From positions 62,001 to 126,000 of IMG/VR virus record IMGVR_UViG_3300047320_000285: a stretch of 64,000 nucleotides of DNA; one strand, given 5' to 3'. Positions 1,007-54,746 of the stretch are shown here, one piece after another. The notes beneath the pieces are model-generated. The model saw nothing but the letters and a program-made list of their open reading frames with translations, was not told the origin of the DNA and made no database searches. Position 1 is the stretch's first letter. Every line of letters starts with the position of its first letter. The translations under genes were made by a program, and so were the position numbers.

Positions 1007-1036
1007 TGTGCCCCGGCTTCGGCTGGGGCATATGCC
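1007..1036 (+). terminator. hairpin + TATGCC terminator-like element
   Basis: TGTGCCCCGGC-TTCG-GCTGGGGCATA stem overlapping TATGCC. Confidence 0.75.
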
Positions 1037-1053
1037 CTAAACGATTTCAGCAA

Positions 1054-1061
1054 TATATTAC
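1054..1061 (+). promoter_or_regulatory. phiKZ-type early promoter motif TATATTAC
   Basis: Exact TATATTAC in an intergenic gap after a terminator; the motif recurs at 47959 and 54739. Confidence 0.7.
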
Positions 1062-2042: not shown

Positions 2043-2687
2043 GTGAGCGAGTTCATGTATTGTCGTGAGTGTAACACCGAGCGTACCGGTCCGGAGATCT
2101 GCTGGAAGTGCAATTCGGCGCTGGAGGAAGTCAAGCACGATCACTGGCATCCGCTGAATATGCCACCGCTTGAGAGAGTACGTGAACTCGCCAAGGAATG
2201 CGGCTATGCATGTGCAATGCATGGTTCGCAGGAACGCGATCTGGATGTGGTGTTGGTGGCGTGGACCGACGAGGCACTGACCCGTACCTATGCCGAAGTC
2301 ATGCACTACATCGCCGCCGGATTGATCGCAGAGAACGGTCTGCCTGCTAGGGTGGTGGAGATTGAAGCCAAGCCACTCGGTCGACATGCCTGTACCATTC
2401 AGATGAACGGCTGGTACAAAGCCATCGATCTGTCGATGGCGGCGTTTATCGCACCCAAGCTGACCAATGAGCAGGCACTGGATGTGCTCGAAGGTGCCGA
2501 CTACATCGATGGCAAGCCGAACTCCCGTGAACCTGACTGGCACACGTTTGGTAGCGATACGGTAGCGATCAGTCTGGATGGTCGCTTTACCCGCGAAGAG
2601 TTGTTGGCCGTCCTGCATTTCCATCCCGACAACCTCCCGGTCGGAACCACCATCGGCTGGCCTGAACCGAAGGAAAAGACAGCATGA
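2043..2687 (+). CDS. hypothetical protein with Zn-ribbon and nucleotidyltransferase-like motif
   Basis: CxxC...CxxC N-terminus and HGSQERDLDVV motif; RBS AAGGAG. Confidence 0.6.
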   Translation: MSEFMYCRECNTERTGPEICWKCNSALEEVKHDHWHPLNMPPLERVRELAKECGYACAMHGSQERDLDVVLVAWTDEALTRTYAEVMHYIAAGLIAENGLPARVVEIEAKPLGRHACTIQMNGWYKAIDLSMAAFIAPKLTNEQALDVLEGADYIDGKPNSREPDWHTFGSDTVAISLDGRFTREELLAVLHFHPDNLPVGTTIGWPEPKEKTA

Positions 2688-3100
2688 AAGAACGATTTGA
2701 TAGTCCGTTCGAGTCGGCCGCAGAAGCACAGGAAGTCATCGACACCAGTCGTCAACTGCAATCTGGCCATTGGATTAATTGGCAACAGTTCGGTTCGGAC
2801 GAGAAACAGTATTTGACACTAGATGGCAACTACACGTTCGCTGAGCTGATGGCCTTGATTCACTTTCATCCGGAGCTGATCAAGCGACGCGCAGAAGCGC
2901 AGCCTGAAGCCAAGAGCGACGAAGTGCGCGTGCTCGAATTGGCGACTCAGAAGCTGACTGAGATGCTGAACGAACTGCTCGAGGACTGTACCGAAGGCCA
3001 GCTTGTCGACGCACCATCGCGCAAGCTTTACATGAAGGCTCGTGCTTGCCTGCCTGCCGGTTACTCGATGTCGTTGACTAAAAAAGAGGGTAAGCCGTAA
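2684..3100 (+). CDS. hypothetical protein sharing a module with the upstream gene
   Basis: ATGA overlap; FGSD...LDG.T..EL.A..HFHP module shared with 2043..2687. Confidence 0.7.
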   Translation: MKERFDSPFESAAEAQEVIDTSRQLQSGHWINWQQFGSDEKQYLTLDGNYTFAELMALIHFHPELIKRRAEAQPEAKSDEVRVLELATQKLTEMLNELLEDCTEGQLVDAPSRKLYMKARACLPAGYSMSLTKKEGKP

Positions 3101-4737: not shown

Positions 4738-5303
4738 TCTCCCGTTTCGCACGCAATATCGCTACCCTGCAGATGCTGGCTTTTGTCATCCTGCTGATCT
4801 GGCGTCCCGGCCATTCGTTGATGCCGGCTTTGGCTTTTCTGGCAGGTGTTTCAGCAACCATCATTGTCGACCGGTTACGACCGGACACGGTCCCGCAGTT
4901 GGAGATTCTGCGCGTGCCACCGGAGGACGATGACATCGAACGCGGGGTGATGGGGATGGTGGGAACAGAAGAGATCTGGATGCGCTCGATCACCGGTATG
5001 GCGCTCGGTGTATTGATCCCGGGACCGGAGACGATTCTGTACGCTGCGATCAAACACTCAGACGGTCGAATCTTTGCGGTGTCCCGCCCGGGTCGTCATG
5101 GTCATGTGCAGCAGTTGATGGAGATGCTCAACTCCGCCACACCCGAAGACTGCACGCCGGAGCGTCAAGGCTTCGTCACATCACTGGGTTCTTGGATGTC
5201 CCGTGAAGACGCACTGAAGGTTGCGCGCATCAACGACCAAGTCGTCTTCAAGCATCCGTCAGTGCGTGAGTTGTATAGCGAAGACATGTGGGATGCCGTT
5301 TAG
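4734..5303 (+). CDS. membrane-anchored hypothetical protein
   Basis: Two N-terminal hydrophobic segments; C-terminal RHGH..QGFVTSLG..SREDA..LYSEDMW phage domain. Confidence 0.7.
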   Translation: MISRFARNIATLQMLAFVILLIWRPGHSLMPALAFLAGVSATIIVDRLRPDTVPQLEILRVPPEDDDIERGVMGMVGTEEIWMRSITGMALGVLIPGPETILYAAIKHSDGRIFAVSRPGRHGHVQQLMEMLNSATPEDCTPERQGFVTSLGSWMSREDALKVARINDQVVFKHPSVRELYSEDMWDAV

Positions 5304-5356
5304 TTTTACAGCGCCGGTTCATTACCTGACACCACTAACATACGAAGGATAACACC

Positions 5357-5677
5357 ATGGGTACCCTGAAGCGCGGCGAGTACGCCCCCCGTAACGAACA
5401 AGACGAACTCGACATCGAAACCCAAGCTCGCGCATTGCAACACTACGCGCTGGAGCGGGGTTACGTGGTGGAGTTGCTGATCAAGTCCAATCCGGCCAAG
5501 CCGGTCACCGGTGCCCACACACTGGGCGTGGCCATGCGTCGTGTTCGCGCGGGCAGTCCGTTGACAGCGTTCGTGGGGCTGTCGAACAAGCCGCTCTCCG
5601 ATCTGTATGCTGGTGAACCGGCAGAAGACATTCCGGTCGCCGCATTCACCGATGTATTCAAGGAGGAGTCAGCATGA
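5357..5677 (+). CDS. hypothetical protein
   Basis: RBS AAGGA, 106 aa. Confidence 0.65.
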   Translation: MGTLKRGEYAPRNEQDELDIETQARALQHYALERGYVVELLIKSNPAKPVTGAHTLGVAMRRVRAGSPLTAFVGLSNKPLSDLYAGEPAEDIPVAAFTDVFKEESA

Positions 5678-6846
5678 CTTCGTTTGAAGAACTGCGTGCC
5701 GAGATCAAACAGGACGTCACCGACGAACTGGGGGACCGGGCACGGCAACACGCCTTGATGGCTCGCCTGCTGGTGTATCTGGGCGGGAAGTTCAAGGAGT
5801 CCGATCCTACCGGCGAACTCGCGACGCTTATGAGTGAGTTCCAGACCAGCCACGAAGAGCGTGAGCGTGAGCGCTTTTCGGTGGAGGAGTATTTCAACGG
5901 CTTGGGTCCGGTCGGCAAACGGGTCCTGGAAGCCGTGCGTCTGAACCAGACCATCGCGGGTCGTCACCAGATCGGCGCGCAGATGCATACGCTCTTTAAG
6001 GAAGCCCTCGCGCCGTTCAGGATTCCGATCTTTAAGGATCCGACCGCCACGCACGAGCTGTACCACCTGATTCAGGAAATCAGCATGCGGGTGTTCGGTC
6101 AATCGGCGACGCTACAGATACCGAGCATTCCGATGCACATGGGGCAGATCCTACCGGAGAATCGGGTCAGCAATTTTTACAACGTCTCGGCTGAAGATAC
6201 CATCACGCGTGAACCGTATTCGCTGGTGATGCTGTATGCGGAGATCGGCAAAGCGTGGGTCTGTGTGGACATTCGTTCCACCGGCCGGGCCCAGCTGATG
6301 TACTACCACAGCGCGGAAGATGTGTGGCTGTTTAACGTCGGCGAGTTCGTGCTGTTCGACATGGTCAAGCATCTGAAGGCAGAATGGGCGAAGCTCGAAA
6401 CCCAGATCGCTGACAAGCTGCCCAATGCTCACGTCAGTCTGCCGGAGACGATGGAAGCGCTGCAGGTGAAAGTCGATCGCGTCTTTGACAACGAACATCT
6501 GATCCCGGATGACGCACGCTATTACTTCCGCGATAAGCGCTTCCCGACCTCCAAGATCGTGCTGCGTATCAAGGACCTGCAAGTCAATTTGATCAACACC
6601 CGTGGCGATTACCCCAGTCGCAACATGTACCTGATTCGAGGGATCGAAGAGGTGATGTCGACGCGCGTCAAGCTTGAGGAACTGAGCCCGCTCGTGCAAA
6701 AACAGGTAATCGACGCAGTGGAAGATGTGCTGGATGGCTACATTGGCAACTACATCGATCCGAAGCCGAAGGAACCGGTGACGAGCACCCCGTTTAAGTT
6801 CCAGAACCCGGTGTTCAATCTGTACGTCGGCCGACCGAAGGAGTGA
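5674..6846 (+). CDS. hypothetical protein
   Basis: RBS AGGAGG, 390-aa ORF. Confidence 0.8.
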   Translation: MTSFEELRAEIKQDVTDELGDRARQHALMARLLVYLGGKFKESDPTGELATLMSEFQTSHEERERERFSVEEYFNGLGPVGKRVLEAVRLNQTIAGRHQIGAQMHTLFKEALAPFRIPIFKDPTATHELYHLIQEISMRVFGQSATLQIPSIPMHMGQILPENRVSNFYNVSAEDTITREPYSLVMLYAEIGKAWVCVDIRSTGRAQLMYYHSAEDVWLFNVGEFVLFDMVKHLKAEWAKLETQIADKLPNAHVSLPETMEALQVKVDRVFDNEHLIPDDARYYFRDKRFPTSKIVLRIKDLQVNLINTRGDYPSRNMYLIRGIEEVMSTRVKLEELSPLVQKQVIDAVEDVLDGYIGNYIDPKPKEPVTSTPFKFQNPVFNLYVGRPKE

Positions 6847-11161: not shown

Positions 11162-11235
11162 CTCCTGACCCTTCCCGGTATTGGGAGGGGTCTTATGTTG
11201 TACGCTGTACTTAAGATAACCAAGAAGGAAAGACC

Positions 11236-41333: not shown

Positions 41334-42464
41334 ATGAGCGACGCAATTATCAAATACGAACGCACCGAGCAAGGTGTGCGCATTGTTCCCGTGTATCGGG
41401 AAGAAACGAAGGACTACTTCGTCGATCTGTCGAAGATCGCGCCATGGCTCGTTGAAGTCGATGGCGTCGAAGTACAGACCGCAGCCCTGAAGATCGGCAC
41501 GCTTTTCGATCTGCTTGGCATCAGCCAGACGCAGTCGTTGCTCGACACCGGCGTGCTCGACATGACCGATTCGCTCGACCCGAACATCGCGCTCGAATCG
41601 ATCTTCGTCGAAGCGAAGTATCCGGACGGCACGTCGAAAGTCCAGCGCTACGAACTCGTGCACGATACGGGTGATCAGCAGGTCGGCACGCAGTTCACGT
41701 TCTTGGCACAGAACCATCGCCAGCTGGAAGTGAGCTACCACACCAACACGCTGCTCTCGCCGTCGGCTAACTCAGCGATGGATCTGCATGTCGCCGGTAT
41801 CATCAACCTCCAGCTGGGTCACTGCGAACTGGTGGCCTCGGGCGTGCAAGCGGGTACGGAACCCGACGTCGAACACGAAGTGATCGGCTATACGCTCAAA
41901 GCTTTCCGCACGAACTACAACCGTCGGCCGGTTGAGATTCCGGCAGTCTGGCCGGAAGGCGAAGCAGTGTTGAAGCAGCCGGAAGCCGAGCAGGAAGCAG
42001 CACCGGAAACACCGGAAGTGATCAGCGCGTTCTCGGGTAAGGAATACATGCCGGGTTACTTCAACCAAGGCAAGCACATCACGTCCCACGAAGTCGAAGG
42101 TGCGGCCAGCAACCTGACGATCACGGTCGGCGATGAACCGGCCGTTCCCGGCAACGCCAACCACCGCTACGACATCACGGGTTTCGATACCGACTCGAAC
42201 GCATCGGAATACGAAGGTTCGTTTGCGCGTGCGTTGTCGATTCTGTTCCAGAACGGTCCGATCCCGTCGCATGGCAATAACGGTGTGACGCTCGAAGCGT
42301 TGCTCGCCGTGGCAGCACATCGTCTGGAAGGTTTCCAAGCGGGTCCGTTCGCTTCGCAGGACAACGAAGACGCCCTCAGTCACATCAAGATGGCGCTCGA
42401 AGCTTTGCAGCGCCGGACTCGCAATCGCATCGCCCGTGAGGTCGAGGGCACCTATCAAGCCTAA
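41334..42464 (+). CDS. fusion of phiKZ-type major-capsid-like domain and Tad1-like anti-defence sponge
   Basis: C-terminus GNANHRY..I.FQNGP....NGVT.E.LL.V..HRL..FQAGPFAS.DN..AL.HI..AL.....RT.NRI.R.VEGT matches the Tad1 pattern; N-terminus RIVPVYR..., DLLGISQT..LL..GV.D.TD.LDP.I.L, IGY.L.A.RTN.NRR recalls phiKZ gp120-family capsid. Confidence 0.75.
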   Translation: MSDAIIKYERTEQGVRIVPVYREETKDYFVDLSKIAPWLVEVDGVEVQTAALKIGTLFDLLGISQTQSLLDTGVLDMTDSLDPNIALESIFVEAKYPDGTSKVQRYELVHDTGDQQVGTQFTFLAQNHRQLEVSYHTNTLLSPSANSAMDLHVAGIINLQLGHCELVASGVQAGTEPDVEHEVIGYTLKAFRTNYNRRPVEIPAVWPEGEAVLKQPEAEQEAAPETPEVISAFSGKEYMPGYFNQGKHITSHEVEGAASNLTITVGDEPAVPGNANHRYDITGFDTDSNASEYEGSFARALSILFQNGPIPSHGNNGVTLEALLAVAAHRLEGFQAGPFASQDNEDALSHIKMALEALQRRTRNRIAREVEGTYQA

Positions 42465-43175: not shown

Positions 43176-43469
43176 ATGCATGTGCTCAACACTTTCCCTA
43201 TTAACAACTGGGCCACCCCGACGTTATCGGAGCCGTCTATCCGGGTGCCGCAAGGCTCGGATCTGATTACGGCGTTTGATGACTTTGTGGGCGACATCCG
43301 GGTGGCGTATTGCGGCGACCCCACGCAGCCCGAGGTGATTGTGTACTTCCGGGTCTATACGGACGGGGCCATGATCGATCCGCGCGAGCTGAAAGAGTGG
43401 CGGCATCTGGCCAGCTTCTTTCATCGCGAGCAGAACAAGACCATGCATGTGTTCTACCGGCCGTTCTGA
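43176..43469 (+). CDS. hypothetical protein
   Basis: AAGGAG RBS. Confidence 0.75.
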   Translation: MHVLNTFPINNWATPTLSEPSIRVPQGSDLITAFDDFVGDIRVAYCGDPTQPEVIVYFRVYTDGAMIDPRELKEWRHLASFFHREQNKTMHVFYRPF

Positions 43470-43482
43470 AGCTTTATCTATA

Positions 43483-43976
43483 TAGAGGCGGCTGCCGCAG
43501 TCAGGTGTCCTTTAACAGTGCTTCGAGGCCTGCCGAAATCATCCGGCTGCGAAGGCTGCTTCTAACTGACATGAGCTGTTCAACGGCTCAGTGGCTCGAG
43601 GACTCACGATTTACTCGGGCTGATCCATTGTTCCGACTGGATCCCGTTACGGGGAGAACGACGGTAAATCGTACGGTAGGTGCGTAACACACCTGCAAGT
43701 TGTCCGTGTTAGTCCGAACGCGTTGCCTTAACGGCCTAGCGTGCTTGCCCCGCCGCGTATGCGGCACCTGTTGGGGCGCGTGTGATTGCCTGCGGTTCGT
43801 CCGCCGGGCGTTGCACTGGGCGGCTACATGCTGCCCGCGAAGCATGTGTGGCTGGCGAGCATGTCGGGCTGAATGTGCAGCCTCTAGGGTTCTTCCGTTA
43901 AACCGGAATATACGAGTGAGAGCCCCTGAGGAAGTGCATTCGAATCGTTCGAGACCATCCTCTAACCCCGTAGGGG
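43483..43976 (+). ncRNA. putative large structured ncRNA 1 (~490 nt), unknown class
   Basis: No RBS-supported ORF over ~590 nt; end pairing TAGAGG/CCTCTA; more than 10 helices including ACGATTTAC/GTAAATCGT; downstream terminator. Confidence 0.7.
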
Positions 43977-44003
43977 CTTTTTGATTCGTTCTATCGACGC
44001 TTC

Positions 44004-44040
44004 GTCATACGGGCCGAGCCTTCGGGCTCGGCTTTATGAT
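44004..44040. terminator. TCATA-hairpin-TATGA element
   Basis: GTCATAC GGGCCGAGCC-TTCG-GGCTCGGC TTTATGA. Confidence 0.8.
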
Positions 44041-44063
44041 GTCAATTTCTTTGTGAGACGACC

Positions 44064-44261
44064 ATGCCTGTCTTTGACATTACCAAAGGCCAGTTCCTGA
44101 CCCTGCAACAAGTCGCGGATAAACTGAAGCTGCGGCTGCCGCAATTGGGTAACATGATTGCCCAGCGGGCGTTCCCGAGTTCCGACAAGACGGTTAATGG
44201 TGTGCAGTACTGGAACCAACGTACTGTGCAAACGTGGCTGGGGAGCCAGCCAACTAAATAG
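44064..44261 (+). CDS. AlpA/excisionase-like small HTH protein
   Basis: FLTLQQVADKLKL...L..MI....FP......YW....VQ.WL. Confidence 0.75.
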   Translation: MPVFDITKGQFLTLQQVADKLKLRLPQLGNMIAQRAFPSSDKTVNGVQYWNQRTVQTWLGSQPTK

Positions 44262-44293
44262 ACCATTCGTATTCCCGTTTGAGGGGGTTCACC

Positions 44294-44515
44294 ATGTCGA
44301 CCATTCCGCTCAGCAGCACCCGGATGATCACGGCGCATCGCGTCATGGATAAGCTCAAAATCAGTCGTGCGATGTTACGCAAACTGATTGCCACCGGCCA
44401 GTTCCCTAAGTCCTCGAGTGAGGTGGGGCAGGCACGCTGGGAAGAGCAGACAGTCGACCAATGGTTGCGCTCCAACAAACAGAATCCCGTCACCCGTAGA
44501 AGAGGCGAACAATGA
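44294..44515 (+). CDS. AlpA-like small HTH protein
   Basis: V..KL.ISRA.L.KLIA.GQFPK.......RW....VDQWL; GAGGGG RBS. Confidence 0.8.
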   Translation: MSTIPLSSTRMITAHRVMDKLKISRAMLRKLIATGQFPKSSSEVGQARWEEQTVDQWLRSNKQNPVTRRRGEQ

Positions 44516-44814
44516 AAGGCACACGCGTATGGCCGGGTGATGACGGACGGCTGAACAGAACCGAGATCAACGCGCCGGGGGCGTATGGCAAACCGCATCC
44601 CCGCATGCTGGAGCGCTTACCGGCGCACTTACGTCAGGCTGACTCCCGCATGCTGTTCTGGGAAGTCACCGCCCCGGACGGCAGCAGCATTATCCTCAAC
44701 CCCGCGATTCACGAAGTCACGGAGTACGAGAATGGGACCATCACCGTATACCCATCGATTGTCACGCCGTCTTGGCACGGCTGGCTTGAATGCGGTACGT
44801 GGCGTTCAGTTTAG
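44512..44814 (+). CDS. DUF6527-like protein
   Basis: H.VTE..NGTITV.PSI....WHGWL..G.W. Confidence 0.55.
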   Translation: MKGTRVWPGDDGRLNRTEINAPGAYGKPHPRMLERLPAHLRQADSRMLFWEVTAPDGSSIILNPAIHEVTEYENGTITVYPSIVTPSWHGWLECGTWRSV

Positions 44815-44822
44815 GAGCAGCA

Positions 44823-45221
44823 ATGAATAATAAACCTGAGTTCATGAACTGGGCGCTGGAGTCGCTGGCGCACAAACCCCTCGCGATTGTGATCATGGGC
44901 AACCCGCGTTACATCGACGACCCCAAGCTTCGTGTGAAAGCCACCGCCCTGTATTGCAAGATCAAGATGTTCCTGCAAAATCGCTACGAGGTGCGTTTCG
45001 ATGCGGGCAAACCCTTCACGCTACCGGATACCCATGCCCAGCTGTGGGTCGCGCATTCGCGGGGGATCGATCGTCTGCAGTACGCCCCCAAGGGTATCAA
45101 GACGATTGCCTTGCAGACGCAGGACCACGATCAGCAGTACGAGACGGATGATCAGCGCGGGCGTGACCCGCTGCACTACGAATTGTCCGAGCAGGATGTC
45201 AAGGCCCTTATGTCTGCTTAA
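44823..45221 (+). CDS. hypothetical protein (AHSRG hydrolase-like elbow)
   Basis: AGGAG RBS. Confidence 0.7.
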   Translation: MNNKPEFMNWALESLAHKPLAIVIMGNPRYIDDPKLRVKATALYCKIKMFLQNRYEVRFDAGKPFTLPDTHAQLWVAHSRGIDRLQYAPKGIKTIALQTQDHDQQYETDDQRGRDPLHYELSEQDVKALMSA

Positions 45222-45474: not shown

Positions 45475-45703
45475 CATTGACGTGCGGATTAACGGTAAGA
45501 ACTACCGCAACATCCGCACCTTCTCGCAGGCCCGCCTTGAACACATCCTGCAGTTGGCCAAGACGCAGGTGGACGACTACCGACGGTGCTACACGGACTT
45601 TGACGAACAAGCTGCCAAGAAAGCCTCTATTTTGGTCCATCTGAATGGACTGGAACAACGCGTGAAACTGATCGAAGAGGTGTTAAATGGGTTGGGAGGA
45701 TAA
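45443..45703 (+). CDS. small coiled-coil hypothetical protein (paralog of upstream gene)
   Basis: IDVRINGKNYRNI..F....LEH aligns with MDLVVNKRYYAQV..L....LTH. Confidence 0.6.
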   Translation: MTSSTGKKLPSIDVRINGKNYRNIRTFSQARLEHILQLAKTQVDDYRRCYTDFDEQAAKKASILVHLNGLEQRVKLIEEVLNGLGG

Positions 45704-46331
45704 GTACCGTAGACATACCTACGCGGCAGAACAACGCGGTATGGATACCAGCCTGACCTTCGATCAGTACATGACAAAGGTCAGGGAGGCTGGTATCGAA
45801 AACCCTGACCAGATCGGTAAGAGAGCGGGTCAGTTTCAGCTAGGGAGAGTCGGTGACGTCGGTCGTTATGAAGACGCTAACTGTCGCTTCATCACGGCTC
45901 GTCAGAATCGGCAAGAGTGTTTCCAGAACGGCCGTCATCTTGAAGGAATGAAGCGTCTATCGGAGCTTCGAACCGGTCAGACCAAAGATGTCTCGGAGTG
46001 GGCTAGAAAAATCTCGCAGACTCTTACTGGTAGGACGAAGGAAACCGATCCGGGTTTGGCAGCAATGGCTGAGAAATTGAGAGGCCGTACGGCAAGCACA
46101 GACCCTAGCTTGGCTTCGGCCGCTGATAAAAAATCACGCGATTTCGTCTTGGTCTCCCCTGATGGACAGATTCATGAAGGAAGAAACATAAGCGAATTTT
46201 GTCGAAGTCAAGGACTTTCTCAGGGAAAGATGTCGGATGTCTGTCGCGGAGACAGGCGTCAGCATAAAGGCTGGACCGGCCATTATCTCCCAGACGAGCC
46301 CGACTTCGTCTGTTATTTTCATGACGACTAA
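45687..46331 (+). CDS. free-standing HNH-like homing endonuclease (paralog of 11556..12188)
   Basis: RVGDVGRYEDANCRFITARQN; three 18-aa GRTKET-type repeats; NUMOD1-like HTH; ends EPDFVCYFHDD. Confidence 0.7.
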   Translation: MGWEDKYRRHTYAAEQRGMDTSLTFDQYMTKVREAGIENPDQIGKRAGQFQLGRVGDVGRYEDANCRFITARQNRQECFQNGRHLEGMKRLSELRTGQTKDVSEWARKISQTLTGRTKETDPGLAAMAEKLRGRTASTDPSLASAADKKSRDFVLVSPDGQIHEGRNISEFCRSQGLSQGKMSDVCRGDRRQHKGWTGHYLPDEPDFVCYFHDD

Positions 46332-47438: not shown

Positions 47439-47466
47439 AAATTTACGTCATCTCCGGATGATGTAG

Positions 47467-47903
47467 ACGCGCACCATGCCTCGTGCATAGGCGGTGACTT
47501 TCGCTCCCAAAGGCGAAGCACAGACCCAGTCATCGCTCATCGAGGTACCAGCATTGCTTCCGAAAGGGTGAAGGGTTTCGATAGCCCGAGCTGGTAGAAT
47601 GTGTTACCGGCCACGAGCCGCTACTCGTCGCTGGCTGCCTGACTAACCGCAAGGAGGTCGGACAGAACTCGTTCGTGTGGCCAATCCCACAACGAGTGAC
47701 TCGCAACACACACCTAAACCCCCGTCGCCAATCACGCGAGTCGGTCGGGCACGGTGAACAGAGTCAACCACTAACGTGTGTAAGGGGAGCCTCATCAACT
47801 CCGAGTAGGGCGTGGCGAAAGGCCTCGCCTGTTCAACCGAGCACATCAGGGCGAAAGTCGAGCGTTAGTGAATCGGTGGTACGCGCTTGCCCGCAAGGGG
47901 GTA
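47467..47903 (+). ncRNA. putative large structured ncRNA 2 (~440 nt), unknown class
   Basis: Nested helices (GCGGTGACT/AGTCATCGC, TACCAGC/GCTGGTA, ACTCGTT/AACGAGT, GACTCGC/GCGAGTC, CACTAACG/CGTTAGTG), GNRA tetraloops, end pairing, downstream terminator. Confidence 0.72.
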
Positions 47904-47906
47904 TTC

Positions 47907-47936
47907 GACCCGGCCCCCAAGGCTGGGTCTTATGCC
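47907..47936 (+). terminator. hairpin + TATGCC terminator-like element
   Basis: GACCCGGCC-CCCAA-GGCTGGGTC TTATGCC. Confidence 0.8.
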
Positions 47937-47958
47937 GTGTTCCAAAAGTTTTGAACAA

Positions 47959-47966
47959 TATATTAC
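47959..47966 (+). promoter_or_regulatory. early promoter motif TATATTAC
   Basis: Exact motif directly after a terminator. Confidence 0.7.
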
Positions 47967-48745: not shown

Positions 48746-49201
48746 ATGGCTTCGAAACGTGCACAAGCGTACATGAACGAGTTCCATGCCCGCAAACTCG
48801 GCAAAGGTCAGGCCAAGATCCTGAACTACTACGAGTACGAGAATCTCGAATACATCGAGACGAATTTTCGCGGTCAACTGAAGGTCCAGCTCTACCGTGA
48901 CGGCATGGAAGAGTTCAGCTACTGGCTTAACCAGAAGGAACGTCAGCCGCTGATTATCGGTATGCTCAAGGCTGGGCTTAAGCAAGCCATGATCGCCAAG
49001 ATCCTCAAGCTCTCGGGCAGCACGATCAACAAGGACGTGCGTTGGTTGCGTCTGAACACCGACAAGCTCGACAGCGTCACCACGCTGCGTGCGCTGCGCC
49101 CGGCCCGTTACGCGGATGCAGACGACGTGTTCCTCAAGCGTGTCGCGCGTGAACAGAATCGCGTCACCGGCATGCCGGCGGCCGTGATCGTGTTGCACTG
49201 A
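48746..49201 (+). CDS. HTH-containing protein
   Basis: AAGGA RBS; GLKQAMIAKILKLSGSTINKDV. Confidence 0.75.
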   Translation: MASKRAQAYMNEFHARKLGKGQAKILNYYEYENLEYIETNFRGQLKVQLYRDGMEEFSYWLNQKERQPLIIGMLKAGLKQAMIAKILKLSGSTINKDVRWLRLNTDKLDSVTTLRALRPARYADADDVFLKRVAREQNRVTGMPAAVIVLH

Positions 49202-54673: not shown

Positions 54674-54716
54674 AAGCTTGAGTACGGGGACGCCTTCGGG
54701 TGTCCCCGTCTATGCC
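54667..54716. terminator. GGCATA-hairpin-TATGCC element
   Basis: ACGGGGACGCC-TTCG-GGTGTCCCCGT CTATGCC. Confidence 0.8.
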
Positions 54717-54738
54717 GTGTTCTAAAGAATCTCAGTCC

Positions 54739-54746
54739 TATATTAC
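54739..54746 (+). promoter_or_regulatory. early promoter motif TATATTAC
   Basis: Exact motif directly after a terminator. Confidence 0.7.

What the first reader, a model, noticed from the sequence alone, without database searches (positions are those of the whole stretch)
43483..43976. Large ornate non-coding RNA candidate 1 (~490 nt)
Seen: the largest gap without an RBS-supported ORF in a very densely coded region, bounded by a stop codon (43469) and a terminator (44004). The ends pair (TAGAGG 43483-88 / CCTCTA 43959-64; GTGCTTC 43518-24 / GAAGTGC 43931-37). Internal helices tile almost the whole length: TGAGCTG/CGGCTCA, ACGATTTAC 43606-14 / GTAAATCGT 43664-72 enclosing GATCCA/TGGATC and CCC/GGG, GTAGGTG/CACCTGC, GGACT/AGTCC, GCCCC/GGGGC enclosing GCCGC/GCGGC, GCGG/CCGC, GGGCGGC/GCTGCCC, GGCTG/CAGCC, GGGTTCT/AGAGCCC and TTCCG/CGGAA. 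Frequent G-U pairs favour the + strand. It lacks tRNA, tmRNA, RNase P and intron hallmarks. Inference: an undescribed large structured phage RNA in the size range of ROOL/OLE-type RNAs, acting as a scaffold, ribozyme or decoy for host defence proteins.
Basis: partly seen in the sequence, partly recalled or inferred. Interest (0 to 1): 0.85.

Follow-up and report, generated by a model that had tools for sequence, protein, structure and literature searches.

The report
New large structured jumbo-phage RNA
The gap holds the gene for a roughly 560-base, intricately folded non-coding RNA from a family absent from Rfam 15 and found here only in one lineage of giant phages, usually at the end of their tRNA gene arrays; its function is unknown, as it is for the few other large phage RNAs of this kind.

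Summary
The finding is real. Window 43483-44041 (+) encodes a conserved, non-coding, highly structured RNA. It folds far better than shuffles on the + strand (z -5.8) than on the - strand (z -2.2). It shows no codon periodicity and no conserved ORF. I collected 16 homologues in three groups. Compensatory base-pair changes are dense: 45 of 185 pairs in the window's group and 58 of 162 in the second group, against 8-19 in slid controls. G-U pairs far outnumber A-C, which fixes the strand. Rfam 15 gives no match in any group. The core is P1, a pseudoknotted P2/P3 unit, P4, an invariant AAGUUGU joiner, a multi-branched centre and a long arm with a conserved internal loop. In seven 28-327 kb contigs, including cultured Burkholderia phage FLC9, the RNA lies just 3' of a tRNA array; an eighth (L041) lies about 400 nt from the nearest detected tRNA. 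Several of these genomes also carry a divergent second copy. By context it resembles ROOL and GOLLD but is not a member of either. Its function is inferred only.

The parts
43470..43482 (+). Conserved AT-rich block (consensus CTTTATYWATATAG) just 5' of the first helix. It is a candidate promoter, transcription start or processing site.
   Evidence: Nearly invariant in all 8 clade-A loci, even where the upstream gene differs. It has no sigma-70-like match and is not the TATATTAC promoter type. Its function is inferred.
43483..43564 (+). H0, a long 5' hairpin found only in the window's clade. It occupies the place that a tRNA holds in the other clades.
   Evidence: Two stacked helices, 43483-43507/43540-43564 and 43511-43521/43528-43538. 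They are 90-92% canonical, and 9 pairs show changes on both sides. G-U outnumbers A-C 46 to 6.
43572..43590 (+). P1 hairpin.
   Evidence: Predicted in every one of the 16 sequences, with different stem sequences such as UGAGCU/GGCUCA, CAGGCGA/UCGCCUG and GGGGG/CCCCC.
43593..43621 (+). P2 hairpin with a 13-nt, nearly invariant loop (GACUCACGAUUYA, 43601-43613).
   Evidence: All 6 modelled pairs show changes on both sides, and 99% of cells are paired.
43605..43610 (+). Pseudoknot, 5' strand (in the P2 loop). It pairs with 43668-43673; in this window the pairing extends to 43606-43614 with 43664-43672.
   Evidence: A-U changes to G-C at one pair in FLC9, L043 and L047. At the flanking pair, C-G, G-C, U-A and U-G occur in the four most divergent sequences. 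Slid controls reach only 5-36% pairing.
43633..43664 (+). P3 hairpin, lying between the two pseudoknot strands.
   Evidence: The outer stem has 5 of 6 pairs with changes on both sides within clade A. The hairpin is recovered in all 16 sequences.
43668..43673 (+). Pseudoknot, 3' strand (AAUCGU plus the next base).
   Evidence: motif table.
43676..43696 (+). P4 hairpin with a 7-nt loop that holds a GNRA-like CGUAA or CGCAA.
   Evidence: All 3 modelled pairs covary. The stems differ in every lineage.
43697..43703 (+). J4/5 joiner AAGUUGU. It is invariant in all 16 members and in the 5 divergent second copies.
43711..43870 (+). Central multi-branched domain closed by P5 (43711-43717 with 43864-43870). 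It holds three inner hairpins. Its length varies between lineages from 88 to 288 nt.
   Evidence: Helix map. P5 changes from UUAG/CUGA to CCAG/CUGG between clades.
43871..43941 (+). P10-P13 arm. P10 is GAAUGYGC with GUGCAUUC. A conserved 2x2 internal loop follows (GCAGCC 43877-43882 opposite GGAAGU 43930-43935), then P11, P12 and P13.
   Evidence: The same irregular hairpin is predicted in all 16 sequences. Eight pairs show changes on both sides within clade A. L047 compensates inside P10 (C-G to U-A).
43942..44002 (+). 3' tail. It holds the helix CGAAUC/GAUUCG (GAGUC/GACUY in clade B), a small hairpin at 43966-43976, and the conserved AUCGACGC (43993-44000). This whole section is absent from the short variant L047.
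   Evidence: The fold of this part is the least certain.
44003..44041 (+). P16, a terminal G+C-rich hairpin with a UUCG loop followed by UUUAUG. This is the phage's generic terminator module and marks the likely 3' end of the RNA. TATG (44035-44038) matches the phiKZ late-promoter consensus.
   Evidence: The stem covaries. The same hairpin-plus-YUUAUG module occurs at 11192, 14009, 24384, 27360, 39429, 47929 and 52613. The TATG consensus is taken from PMC7618050.

Best explanation
SHOWN. Window 43483-44041 (+) is the gene for a stable, elaborately folded non-coding RNA. The core is about 480 nt, and a clade-specific 5' hairpin adds about 80 nt. The RNA belongs to a family that is absent from Rfam 15. 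With these tools I found the family only in one lineage of phiKZ-like jumbo phages, which includes cultured Burkholderia phage FLC9.

The fold has these parts, in order:
- P1
- P2, whose conserved loop forms a pseudoknot with the strand that follows hairpin P3
- P4
- an invariant AAGUUGU joiner
- a variable multi-branched centre closed by P5
- a long arm (P10-P13) with a conserved GCAGCC/GGAAGU internal loop
- a terminal hairpin that is the phage's usual terminator

INFERRED (about 0.45). In the FLC9-like phages the RNA is the last product of the tRNA operon. Cleavage at the 3' end of the preceding tRNA would free its 5' end. In the window's clade a 5' hairpin replaces the tRNA. The terminal hairpins would protect the RNA, so it accumulates and acts in trans through its pseudoknotted core. 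It would serve as a folded scaffold, either alone or with a protein partner, as proposed for ROOL and GOLLD. Its most likely field of action is tRNA use or translation during infection.
For: Fold and strand
- z -5.81 on + against -2.18 on -.
- G-U outnumbers A-C in pairs 259 to 17 in clade A and 142 to 27 in clade B.

Non-coding
- Variable columns are spread 96/86/93 over the three codon positions. The flanking genes give 32/24/50 and 162/138/269.
- Internal gaps are mostly not multiples of 3, and no frame stays open across the homologues.

Conservation
- A gap of about 600 nt is kept in synteny in 8 loci whose flanking protein is only 48-79% identical.

Covariation
- 68 of 145 pairs have changes on both sides.
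- In the 5' domain, 13 of 13 pairs do. 96.6% of cells are paired against 68% in shuffles, with 0 of 500 shuffles as high; slid controls give 32-51%.
- My own count gives 21 of 27 pairs in the 5' domain and 21 of 46 in the 3' domain, against 4-9 and 7-9 when slid.
- Clade A gives 45 of 185 pairs against 8-11 slid. Clade B gives 58 of 162 against 10-19 slid.
- The pseudoknot covaries.

Not a known family
- Rfam gives nothing at the gathering score or at E<=10 for the window, nothing at E<=1 for three other members, and nothing for the second copies.

Context
- The RNA starts 3-100 nt after the last tRNA of an array, on the same strand, in FLC9, L036, L042, L043, L044, L045 and L047.
- The 3' hairpin is a module repeated across the genome.
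- ROOL and GOLLD are likewise encoded in phages, 'often near tRNA islands'.
Against: - No expression data exist, so both transcript ends are inferred.
- Only 16 sequences are known, about 10 of them effectively independent, and no phylogeny-aware test such as R-scape was run.
- No partner protein is indicated. The neighbouring genes have no informative matches.
- In the window's own clade no tRNA lies nearby; ARAGORN finds none in the 64 kb. The tRNA link therefore does not hold for the whole family.
- Nothing tests oligomerisation, stability or action in trans.
Confidence: 0.8

Rival explanations
1. It is an anti-defence decoy or sponge. The folded RNA, or its tRNA-like surroundings, would soak up or mislead a host RNA-targeting immune protein, just as phage tRNA arrays are thought to counter tRNA-cleaving defences.
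For: The RNA sits in or beside tRNA arrays. In the window a protein with an Acb2/Tad1-hairpin domain (anti-CBASS and anti-Thoeris sponge families) lies 1 kb upstream. The jumbo-phage review links phage tRNAs to reversing tRNA cleavage.
Against: No part resembles a tRNA or any known target RNA. The Acb2/Tad1 match is marked weak at most loci. A conserved pseudoknotted core with invariant joiners is not what a simple decoy needs. No host defence system is implicated.
Confidence: 0.15
2. It is a new ribozyme. The invariant unpaired nucleotides (GACU in the P2 loop, AAGUUGU, the GCAGCC/GGAAGU loop) and the pseudoknot would form an active site, possibly acting on the co-transcribed tRNA precursors.
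For: The strictest conservation lies in loops and joiners, not in helices. These motifs persist in the short variant L047 and in the divergent second copies, while the peripheral domains come and go.
Against: The RNA matches no ribozyme family. No conserved cleavage-site context was identified. Host RNase P and 3'-processing enzymes already mature phage tRNAs (general knowledge). Conserved joiners are equally expected for a protein-binding or ligand-binding core.
Confidence: 0.08
3. It is a cis-acting leader (riboswitch or attenuator type) that controls the downstream HTH genes at 44064-44515.
For: In all 8 clade-A loci the RNA lies directly upstream of the same 65-aa and 73-aa HTH gene pair, whereas the upstream gene varies.
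Against: In the FLC9-like phages and in L047 the downstream gene is different; it is a homologue of window 48746-49201. The RNA there follows tRNAs and ends in the generic terminator, and L036 has a separate promoter-like site after it. At 480-590 nt it is far larger than known leaders.
Confidence: 0.06
4. It is a very divergent member of ROOL or GOLLD.
For: It shares their habitat (phage genomes, next to tRNA islands), size class and ornate, pseudoknotted character.
Against: Neither covariance model gives a hit, even at E<=10 with permissive filters on 851 nt or at E<=1 in three other members.
Confidence: 0.04
5. It is protein-coding, a broken gene read through the stop at 43685-43687 (ORFs 43310-43687 and 43700-43984), or a DNA-level element such as an origin or packaging site.
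For: Frame 2 is open across most of the region apart from one stop. The region is G+C-rich, which yields long chance ORFs.
Against: Variation shows no 3-base periodicity. Of the internal gaps, 143 of 153 are not multiples of 3, and the open frame differs from one homologue to the next. The first ORF overlaps the better-supported 97-aa gene. The predicted peptides are Arg/Cys-rich. The excess of G-U over A-C shows that selection acts on a single-stranded + transcript, not on duplex DNA.
Confidence: 0.02

Closest known systems
ROOL RNA (Rfam RF03087)
   Same: Both are encoded in phages and prophages, often next to tRNA islands. Both are about 500-600 nt, have many helices and pseudoknots, have no known protein partner and have no known function.
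   Different: The covariance model gives no match. The hosts and phage types differ: this RNA comes from phiKZ-like jumbo phages of Burkholderia-type hosts. Whether it forms ROOL-style homo-oligomeric cages is untested.
GOLLD RNA (Rfam RF01998)
   Same: Both are phage-encoded and linked to tRNA arrays, sometimes covalently to a tRNA. Both combine strongly conserved and more variable domains: GOLLD has a conserved 3' region and a variable 5' region, while this RNA has conserved 5' and 3' domains and a variable centre.
   Different: The covariance model gives no match. This RNA is smaller (480-590 nt against more than 800) and has a different domain order.
Stable 'species 1 and 2' RNAs of the phage T4 tRNA gene cluster (from my own knowledge, not checked here)
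   Same: Both are non-tRNA stable RNAs co-encoded with a phage tRNA cluster and presumably cut from the same precursor. Both have unknown function.
   Different: The T4 RNAs are only about 140 nt and are unrelated in sequence. This comparison is recalled from memory and serves only as a lead.
phiKZ-type transcription signals (promoter TATATTAC; late promoter TATG)
   Same: The window carries three TATATTAC sites, each about 20 nt after a hairpin-plus-YUAUGCC module. The RNA ends in such a hairpin followed by TATG.
   Different: These signals mark the edges of the gene and are not part of its functional fold. The RNA has no TATATTAC of its own upstream.

Membership tests
ROOL (RF03087) | Match to the family covariance model | tested here: not met
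   No hit at the gathering score, at E<=10 on 851 nt, or at E<=1 in FLC9, L043 and L047.
ROOL (RF03087) | Phage or prophage location near tRNA islands | tested here: met
   The RNA lies directly 3' of tRNA arrays in 7 contigs. This does not hold in the window's own clade.
ROOL / GOLLD | Homo-oligomeric cage assembly | not testable with these tools
   This needs SEC-MALS or cryo-EM of the transcript.
GOLLD (RF01998) | Match to the family covariance model | tested here: not met
tmRNA | tRNA-like domain formed by the 5' and 3' ends, plus a tag reading frame | tested here: not met
   ARAGORN finds none. No tmRNA model matches within the RNA. The 3' end is a terminator hairpin, not an acceptor stem.
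RNase P RNA | Match to a family model or presence of the conserved P4 core | tested here: not met
   No Rfam match of any RNase P type. I did not see the conserved core strings when reading the alignments.
Group I / group II introns | Match to the intron models; insertion inside a gene with exon continuity | tested here: not met
   No Rfam match. The element lies between complete genes or after complete tRNAs.
OMEGA / HEARO guide RNAs (IscB, TnpB) | Adjacent IscB or TnpB nuclease gene; match to the HEARO model | tested here: not met
   The neighbours are small proteins of unknown function and HTH proteins. There is no Rfam hit.
New family defined here | P2 loop RACUNACGRU pairing with AAYCGU after P3; then P4; then AAGUUGU; later YGCAGCC opposite GGAWGURCAU | tested here: met
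   All these motifs occur in the same order and with similar spacing in 16 of 16 members. Model R1 scores 75-128 bits for the members, and the next best hit scores 14.5 bits.
Generic phage terminator module | G+C-rich hairpin followed by YUUAUG, repeated at intergenic sites on the coding strand | tested here: met
   44003-44041 is one of at least 8 such sites in the window.

The most novel reading that the evidence does not exclude
The RNA, together with its divergent second copy in FLC9-like phages, is a new class of functional RNA machine. It would be either a self-assembling RNA-only particle like ROOL and GOLLD but with an unrelated fold, or a ribozyme whose active site is built from the invariant pseudoknot, the AAGUUGU joiner and the GCAGCC/GGAAGU loop. 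It would act on tRNAs or ribosomes during jumbo-phage infection.
Probability: 0.2. Interest if true: 0.92.

Novelty: new variant of a known kind. Interest (0 to 1): 0.72.

Why it matters
Very few bacterial or phage RNA classes exceed 400 nt and still lack a known function; OLE, GOLLD, ROOL and raiA are the main ones. Each has repaid study, most recently with the finding that ROOL and GOLLD form RNA-only cages.

This family would add another such class, with several practical advantages:
- It lies in a different phage world, the phiKZ-like jumbo phages.
- It has a clear modular fold.
- It has natural short variants (about 390 nt) that point to a minimal core.
- A paralogous second copy exists in the same genomes.
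- One member lies in a cultured phage, Burkholderia phage FLC9, in two stretches of the GenBank record that carry no annotation.

The repeated placement of large structured RNAs at the end of phage tRNA arrays, now seen in three unrelated families, strengthens the case that these RNAs share a role tied to tRNA or translation. That idea becomes testable in a tractable phage-host pair.

Tried and rejected
Searches that found nothing
- DNA searches of 50,697 GenBank phage records with the window RNA, near and distant modes.
- An 18-mer scan of JGI metagenome contigs gave 23 loci. All were chance matches by nhmmer.
- Two degenerate motif scans of 185,579 bacterial and archaeal genomes gave 0 and 37 loci. 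None was confirmed by nhmmer. The family was therefore not found in cellular genomes.
- One IMG/VR motif hit, L046, is a chance match inside coding sequence.
- Self-comparison found no paralogue of the target in the 64-kb window.

Relatives tested and negative
- Ralstonia phage FLC1-1B and Burkholderia phage BcepSaruman have tRNA clusters but no match to model R1.
- blastn with the FLC9 and L036 copies, and with the most conserved 43-mer, recovers only FLC9 among cultured phages.

Structural ideas dropped
- The UUCGAAU string at 43938-43944 looks like a tRNA T-loop. The flanking bases do not form a conserved T-stem, the string is missing from L047 and from the second copies, and the preceding bases are better explained as helix P10.
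- H0 as a decayed tRNA is suggested only by a MAFFT alignment to the FLC9 tRNA-Phe 3' half. No tRNA model matches it, so this stays speculation.
- CUGAUGAG at the 5' end of the second copies recalls the hammerhead core, but there is no Rfam hit and no GAAA element.

Protein and literature leads
- Neighbouring proteins gave no functional lead in PHROGs, Pfam or the ESM Atlas.
- Literature searches found no description of this RNA.
- A 2023 catalogue of about 10,000 unnamed candidate viral RNA structures could not be checked because its supplementary tables are not held.

- MAFFT Q-INS-i is not installed, so all alignments are sequence-based or fitted to a covariance model.

Full report
WHAT IS THERE

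The window is part of IMG/VR contig IMGVR_UViG_3300047320_000285, which is 253,740 bp long. The phage is phiKZ-like. It has proteins with a PhiKZ_MCP domain. It has three copies of the phiKZ-type promoter TATATTAC where 0.28 are expected (motif named in PMC7058600).

The finding lies between a 97-aa ORF that ends at 43469 and a 65-aa helix-turn-helix gene that starts at 44064.

IS IT MORE THAN CHANCE

Folded as RNA, the + strand of 43470-44040 reaches -258 kcal/mol, against -217 +/- 7 for dinucleotide shuffles. That is z -5.81, and none of 100 shuffles folds as well. The - strand gives z -2.18. The refined span 43483-44041 gives z -5.75.

RELATIVES

Homologues of the nearby 376-aa protein led to seven further contigs (L002, L004, L007, L008, L009, L034, L035). 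Each keeps a gene-free gap of about 600 nt in the same place, directly upstream of the same 65-aa gene. The gap aligns at 79% mean column identity although the flanking protein is only 48-79% identical.

A profile from these sequences found a distant match in L036, a 327-kb contig, and then in cultured Burkholderia phage FLC9 (LC667451, about 127.6-128.2 kb).

Degenerate motif scans of IMG/VR added L041-L045 and a short variant, L047. The set is 16 sequences in three groups:
- Clade A: the window and seven others.
- Clade B: FLC9, L036 and L041-L045.
- L047.

Scans of 185,579 bacterial and archaeal genomes gave nothing real. Among 50,697 GenBank phage records only FLC9 carries the RNA.

IT IS NOT CODING

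Across clade A, variable columns are spread evenly over the three codon positions (96/86/93). The flanking genes show the usual third-position excess (32/24/50 and 162/138/269). Of 153 internal alignment gaps, 143 are not multiples of three. The longest open frame shifts from one homologue to another.

The first overlaps the well-supported 97-aa gene, and neither is conserved.

THE STRUCTURE IS UNDER SELECTION ON THE + STRAND

- RNAalifold on ten sequences predicts 145 pairs, and 68 have at least one compensatory change on both sides.
- For the 5' domain in 16 sequences, all 13 modelled pairs show such changes. 96.6% of cells are paired, against 68.4% in shuffles (0 of 500 as high) and 32-51% when partners are slid.
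- I aligned the stretches between invariant anchor strings by sequence alone. On that alignment, 21 of 27 pairs in the 5' domain have changes on both sides, against 4-9 when slid. In the 3' domain 21 of 46 do, against 7-9 when slid.
- Over the whole RNA, clade A has 185 pairs, 94.7% canonical, with 45 changed on both sides against 8-11 slid. Clade B has 162 pairs, 90.3% canonical, with 58 changed on both sides against 10-19 slid.
- G-U cells outnumber A-C cells 259 to 17 in clade A and 142 to 27 in clade B. This is expected only if the + strand transcript is what folds.

These tests do not model phylogeny. The slid controls keep relatedness and are far lower.

THE FOLD (window coordinates)

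- H0, 43483-43564: a long hairpin found only in clade A.
- P1, 43572-43590.
- P2, 43593-43621, with a nearly invariant 13-nt loop.
- P3, 43633-43664.
- A pseudoknot between the P2 loop (43605-43610) and 43668-43673. One pair switches from A-U to G-C in FLC9, L043 and L047. The next pair reads C-G, G-C, U-A or U-G in the four most divergent sequences.
- P4, 43676-43696, with a GNRA-like loop.
- The invariant joiner AAGUUGU, 43697-43703.
- A multi-branched centre closed by P5 (43711-43717 with 43864-43870). Its length ranges from 88 to 288 nt across the family.
- The P10-P13 arm, 43871-43941, which carries a conserved 2x2 internal loop, GCAGCC opposite GGAAGU. The same arm is predicted independently in all 16 sequences, and L047 compensates inside P10.
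- A less certain 3' tail, 43942-44002.
- P16, 44003-44041.

P16 is not specific to this RNA. The same G+C-rich hairpin followed by YUUAUG recurs at seven or more intergenic sites in the window. Three of them are followed about 20 nt later by TATATTAC. TATG is also the phiKZ late-promoter consensus (PMC7618050). P16 therefore marks the end of the RNA gene and possibly the start of the next transcription unit.

- Eight of the thirteen listed helices are right.
- The two helices said to join the ends are not. TAGAGG pairs locally within H0. Its proposed partner CCTCTA mutates to CTCCTA without compensation. GAAGTGC is the 3' strand of P10.
- GATCCA/TGGATC is peculiar to this sequence.
- GGACT/AGTCC and GGCTG/CAGCC are displaced by P5.
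- The RNA extends about 65 nt beyond the stated end. The U-rich hairpin at 43966-43984 is internal: in clade B the equivalent hairpin has no U tract, and conserved pairing partners lie downstream of it.

CONTEXT

In FLC9, L036, L042, L043, L044, L045 and L047 the RNA begins 3-100 nt after the last tRNA of an array, on the same strand. In FLC9 it follows the encoded CCA of tRNA-Phe almost directly. L041 is the exception: its RNA starts about 400 nt from the nearest tRNA that ARAGORN detects. The window has no tRNA in 64 kb; there the hairpin H0 stands where the tRNA would be.

Downstream of the RNA, clade B has homologues of window genes 48746-49201 and 44790-45221. The loci are therefore related despite rearrangement.

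The neighbouring proteins gave no functional lead. There is no reverse transcriptase, no IscB or TnpB, and no Ro60.

COMPARISON WITH KNOWN RNAS

Rfam 15 (4,227 families) gives no match in any of these searches:
- at the gathering score on the whole window;
- at E<=10 on 851 nt around the finding;
- at E<=1 on FLC9, L043 and L047, where only the upstream tRNAs score;
- on the second copies.

The RNA is therefore not a detectable member of ROOL, GOLLD, OLE, raiA, tmRNA, RNase P, the intron families or HEARO. [quoted passage not shown]

I found no paper that describes this RNA. I could not check the unnamed entries of a 2023 catalogue of viral RNA structures.

MOST LIKELY MECHANISM

Shown: a conserved, structured, non-coding gene on the + strand, with a pseudoknotted core, bounded at its 3' end by the phage's terminator module, and physically linked to tRNA arrays in two of its three lineages.

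Inferred: it is transcribed with the tRNAs and released by cleavage at the 3' end of the preceding tRNA. In clade A it starts or is processed at the conserved AT-rich box before H0. Its terminal hairpins stabilise it, and it acts in trans through its conserved core.

I put about 0.45 on a ROOL/GOLLD-like role as a scaffold or particle connected with tRNA or translation. I put about 0.15 on an anti-defence decoy, about 0.08 on catalysis and about 0.06 on a cis-regulatory leader. The remainder is unknown.

The pattern of conservation says the core matters most and that the centre and the 3' tail are accessory. The joiners, the loops and the pseudoknot are invariant. The centre is variable and the tail can be lost.

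VERDICT

This is a genuine new family of large structured phage RNA. It belongs to the same broad kind as ROOL and GOLLD but is not related to them by any test available here. A cultured phage carries it, so it can be studied directly.

Noticed in passing
L036 9442-10001; L037 161-718; L085 1501-2007 (FLC9 LC667451 137440-137947, - strand); L086 ~4800-5410; L087 ~5940-6560 (-); L088 ~2430-3050 (-): At least four FLC9-like genomes (L036/L037, FLC9, and the contigs of L041, L042 and L043) carry a second, divergent structured RNA of about 500 nt. It shares the target's core motifs: a UUCACGAU loop, AAAUCGUACGG, GCAAGUUGU, and GCAGCC followed by AGRAAGU. On 5 sequences it has 143 predicted pairs, 92.6% canonical. 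47 pairs have changes on both sides, against 4-17 when slid. G-U outnumbers A-C 92 to 14. Rfam gives no hit. In FLC9 it lies in an unannotated gap between gp133 and gp132.
   Followed up: partly
window 47439-47950 (+): A second conserved gene-free block of about 510 nt lies 3.4 kb downstream, after the 251-aa gene. All 8 clade-A loci keep it. It folds with z -3.95, shares none of the target's motifs, and ends in the same terminator hairpin followed by a TATATTAC promoter.
   Followed up: partly
window 1029-1061, 47929-47966, 54709-54746; also 11192, 14009, 24384, 27360, 39429, 52613: A transcription punctuation module recurs on the + strand. It is a G+C-rich hairpin, then YUUAUG(C/A), and at three sites the phiKZ-type promoter TATATTAC about 20 nt later. 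It is useful for defining operons in this phage.
   Followed up: partly
L038 4003-5556 (FLC9 LC667451 ~128.1-129.7 kb): ARAGORN and Rfam find 8-12 tRNAs here. The GenBank record annotates none in this stretch. Instead it lists a 58-aa 'hypothetical protein' gp119 (L038 5149-5322) that overlaps tRNA-Gln, which is probably a false gene call.
   Followed up: no
window 41334-42464 (+): This 376-aa protein combines a fragment similar to the phiKZ major capsid protein N-terminal region with an Acb2/Tad1-hairpin domain (anti-CBASS and anti-Thoeris sponge families; the match is weak at most loci). In more distant relatives, including FLC9, it is fused to a cyclophilin-type prolyl isomerase.
   Followed up: no
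window 45687-46331 (+): This 214-aa ORF has a weak I-HmuI NUMOD-like match, typical of homing endonucleases. The other clade-A loci show no gene of this size at this position, so it may be a mobile insertion.
   Followed up: no
L039 6376-7417 (Ralstonia phage FLC1-1B): A gap of about 1 kb with no annotated gene lies downstream of this phage's tRNA cluster. Model R1 does not match it. It could hold an unrelated RNA in the same position.
   Followed up: no
L036 18733-18830: Between the last tRNA that ARAGORN calls (tRNA-Gln) and the start of the RNA lies a stretch ending in GGUUCGAGUCCC...CCGCCAC. It looks like the 3' half of a further, unusual tRNA that ARAGORN did not call.
   Followed up: no
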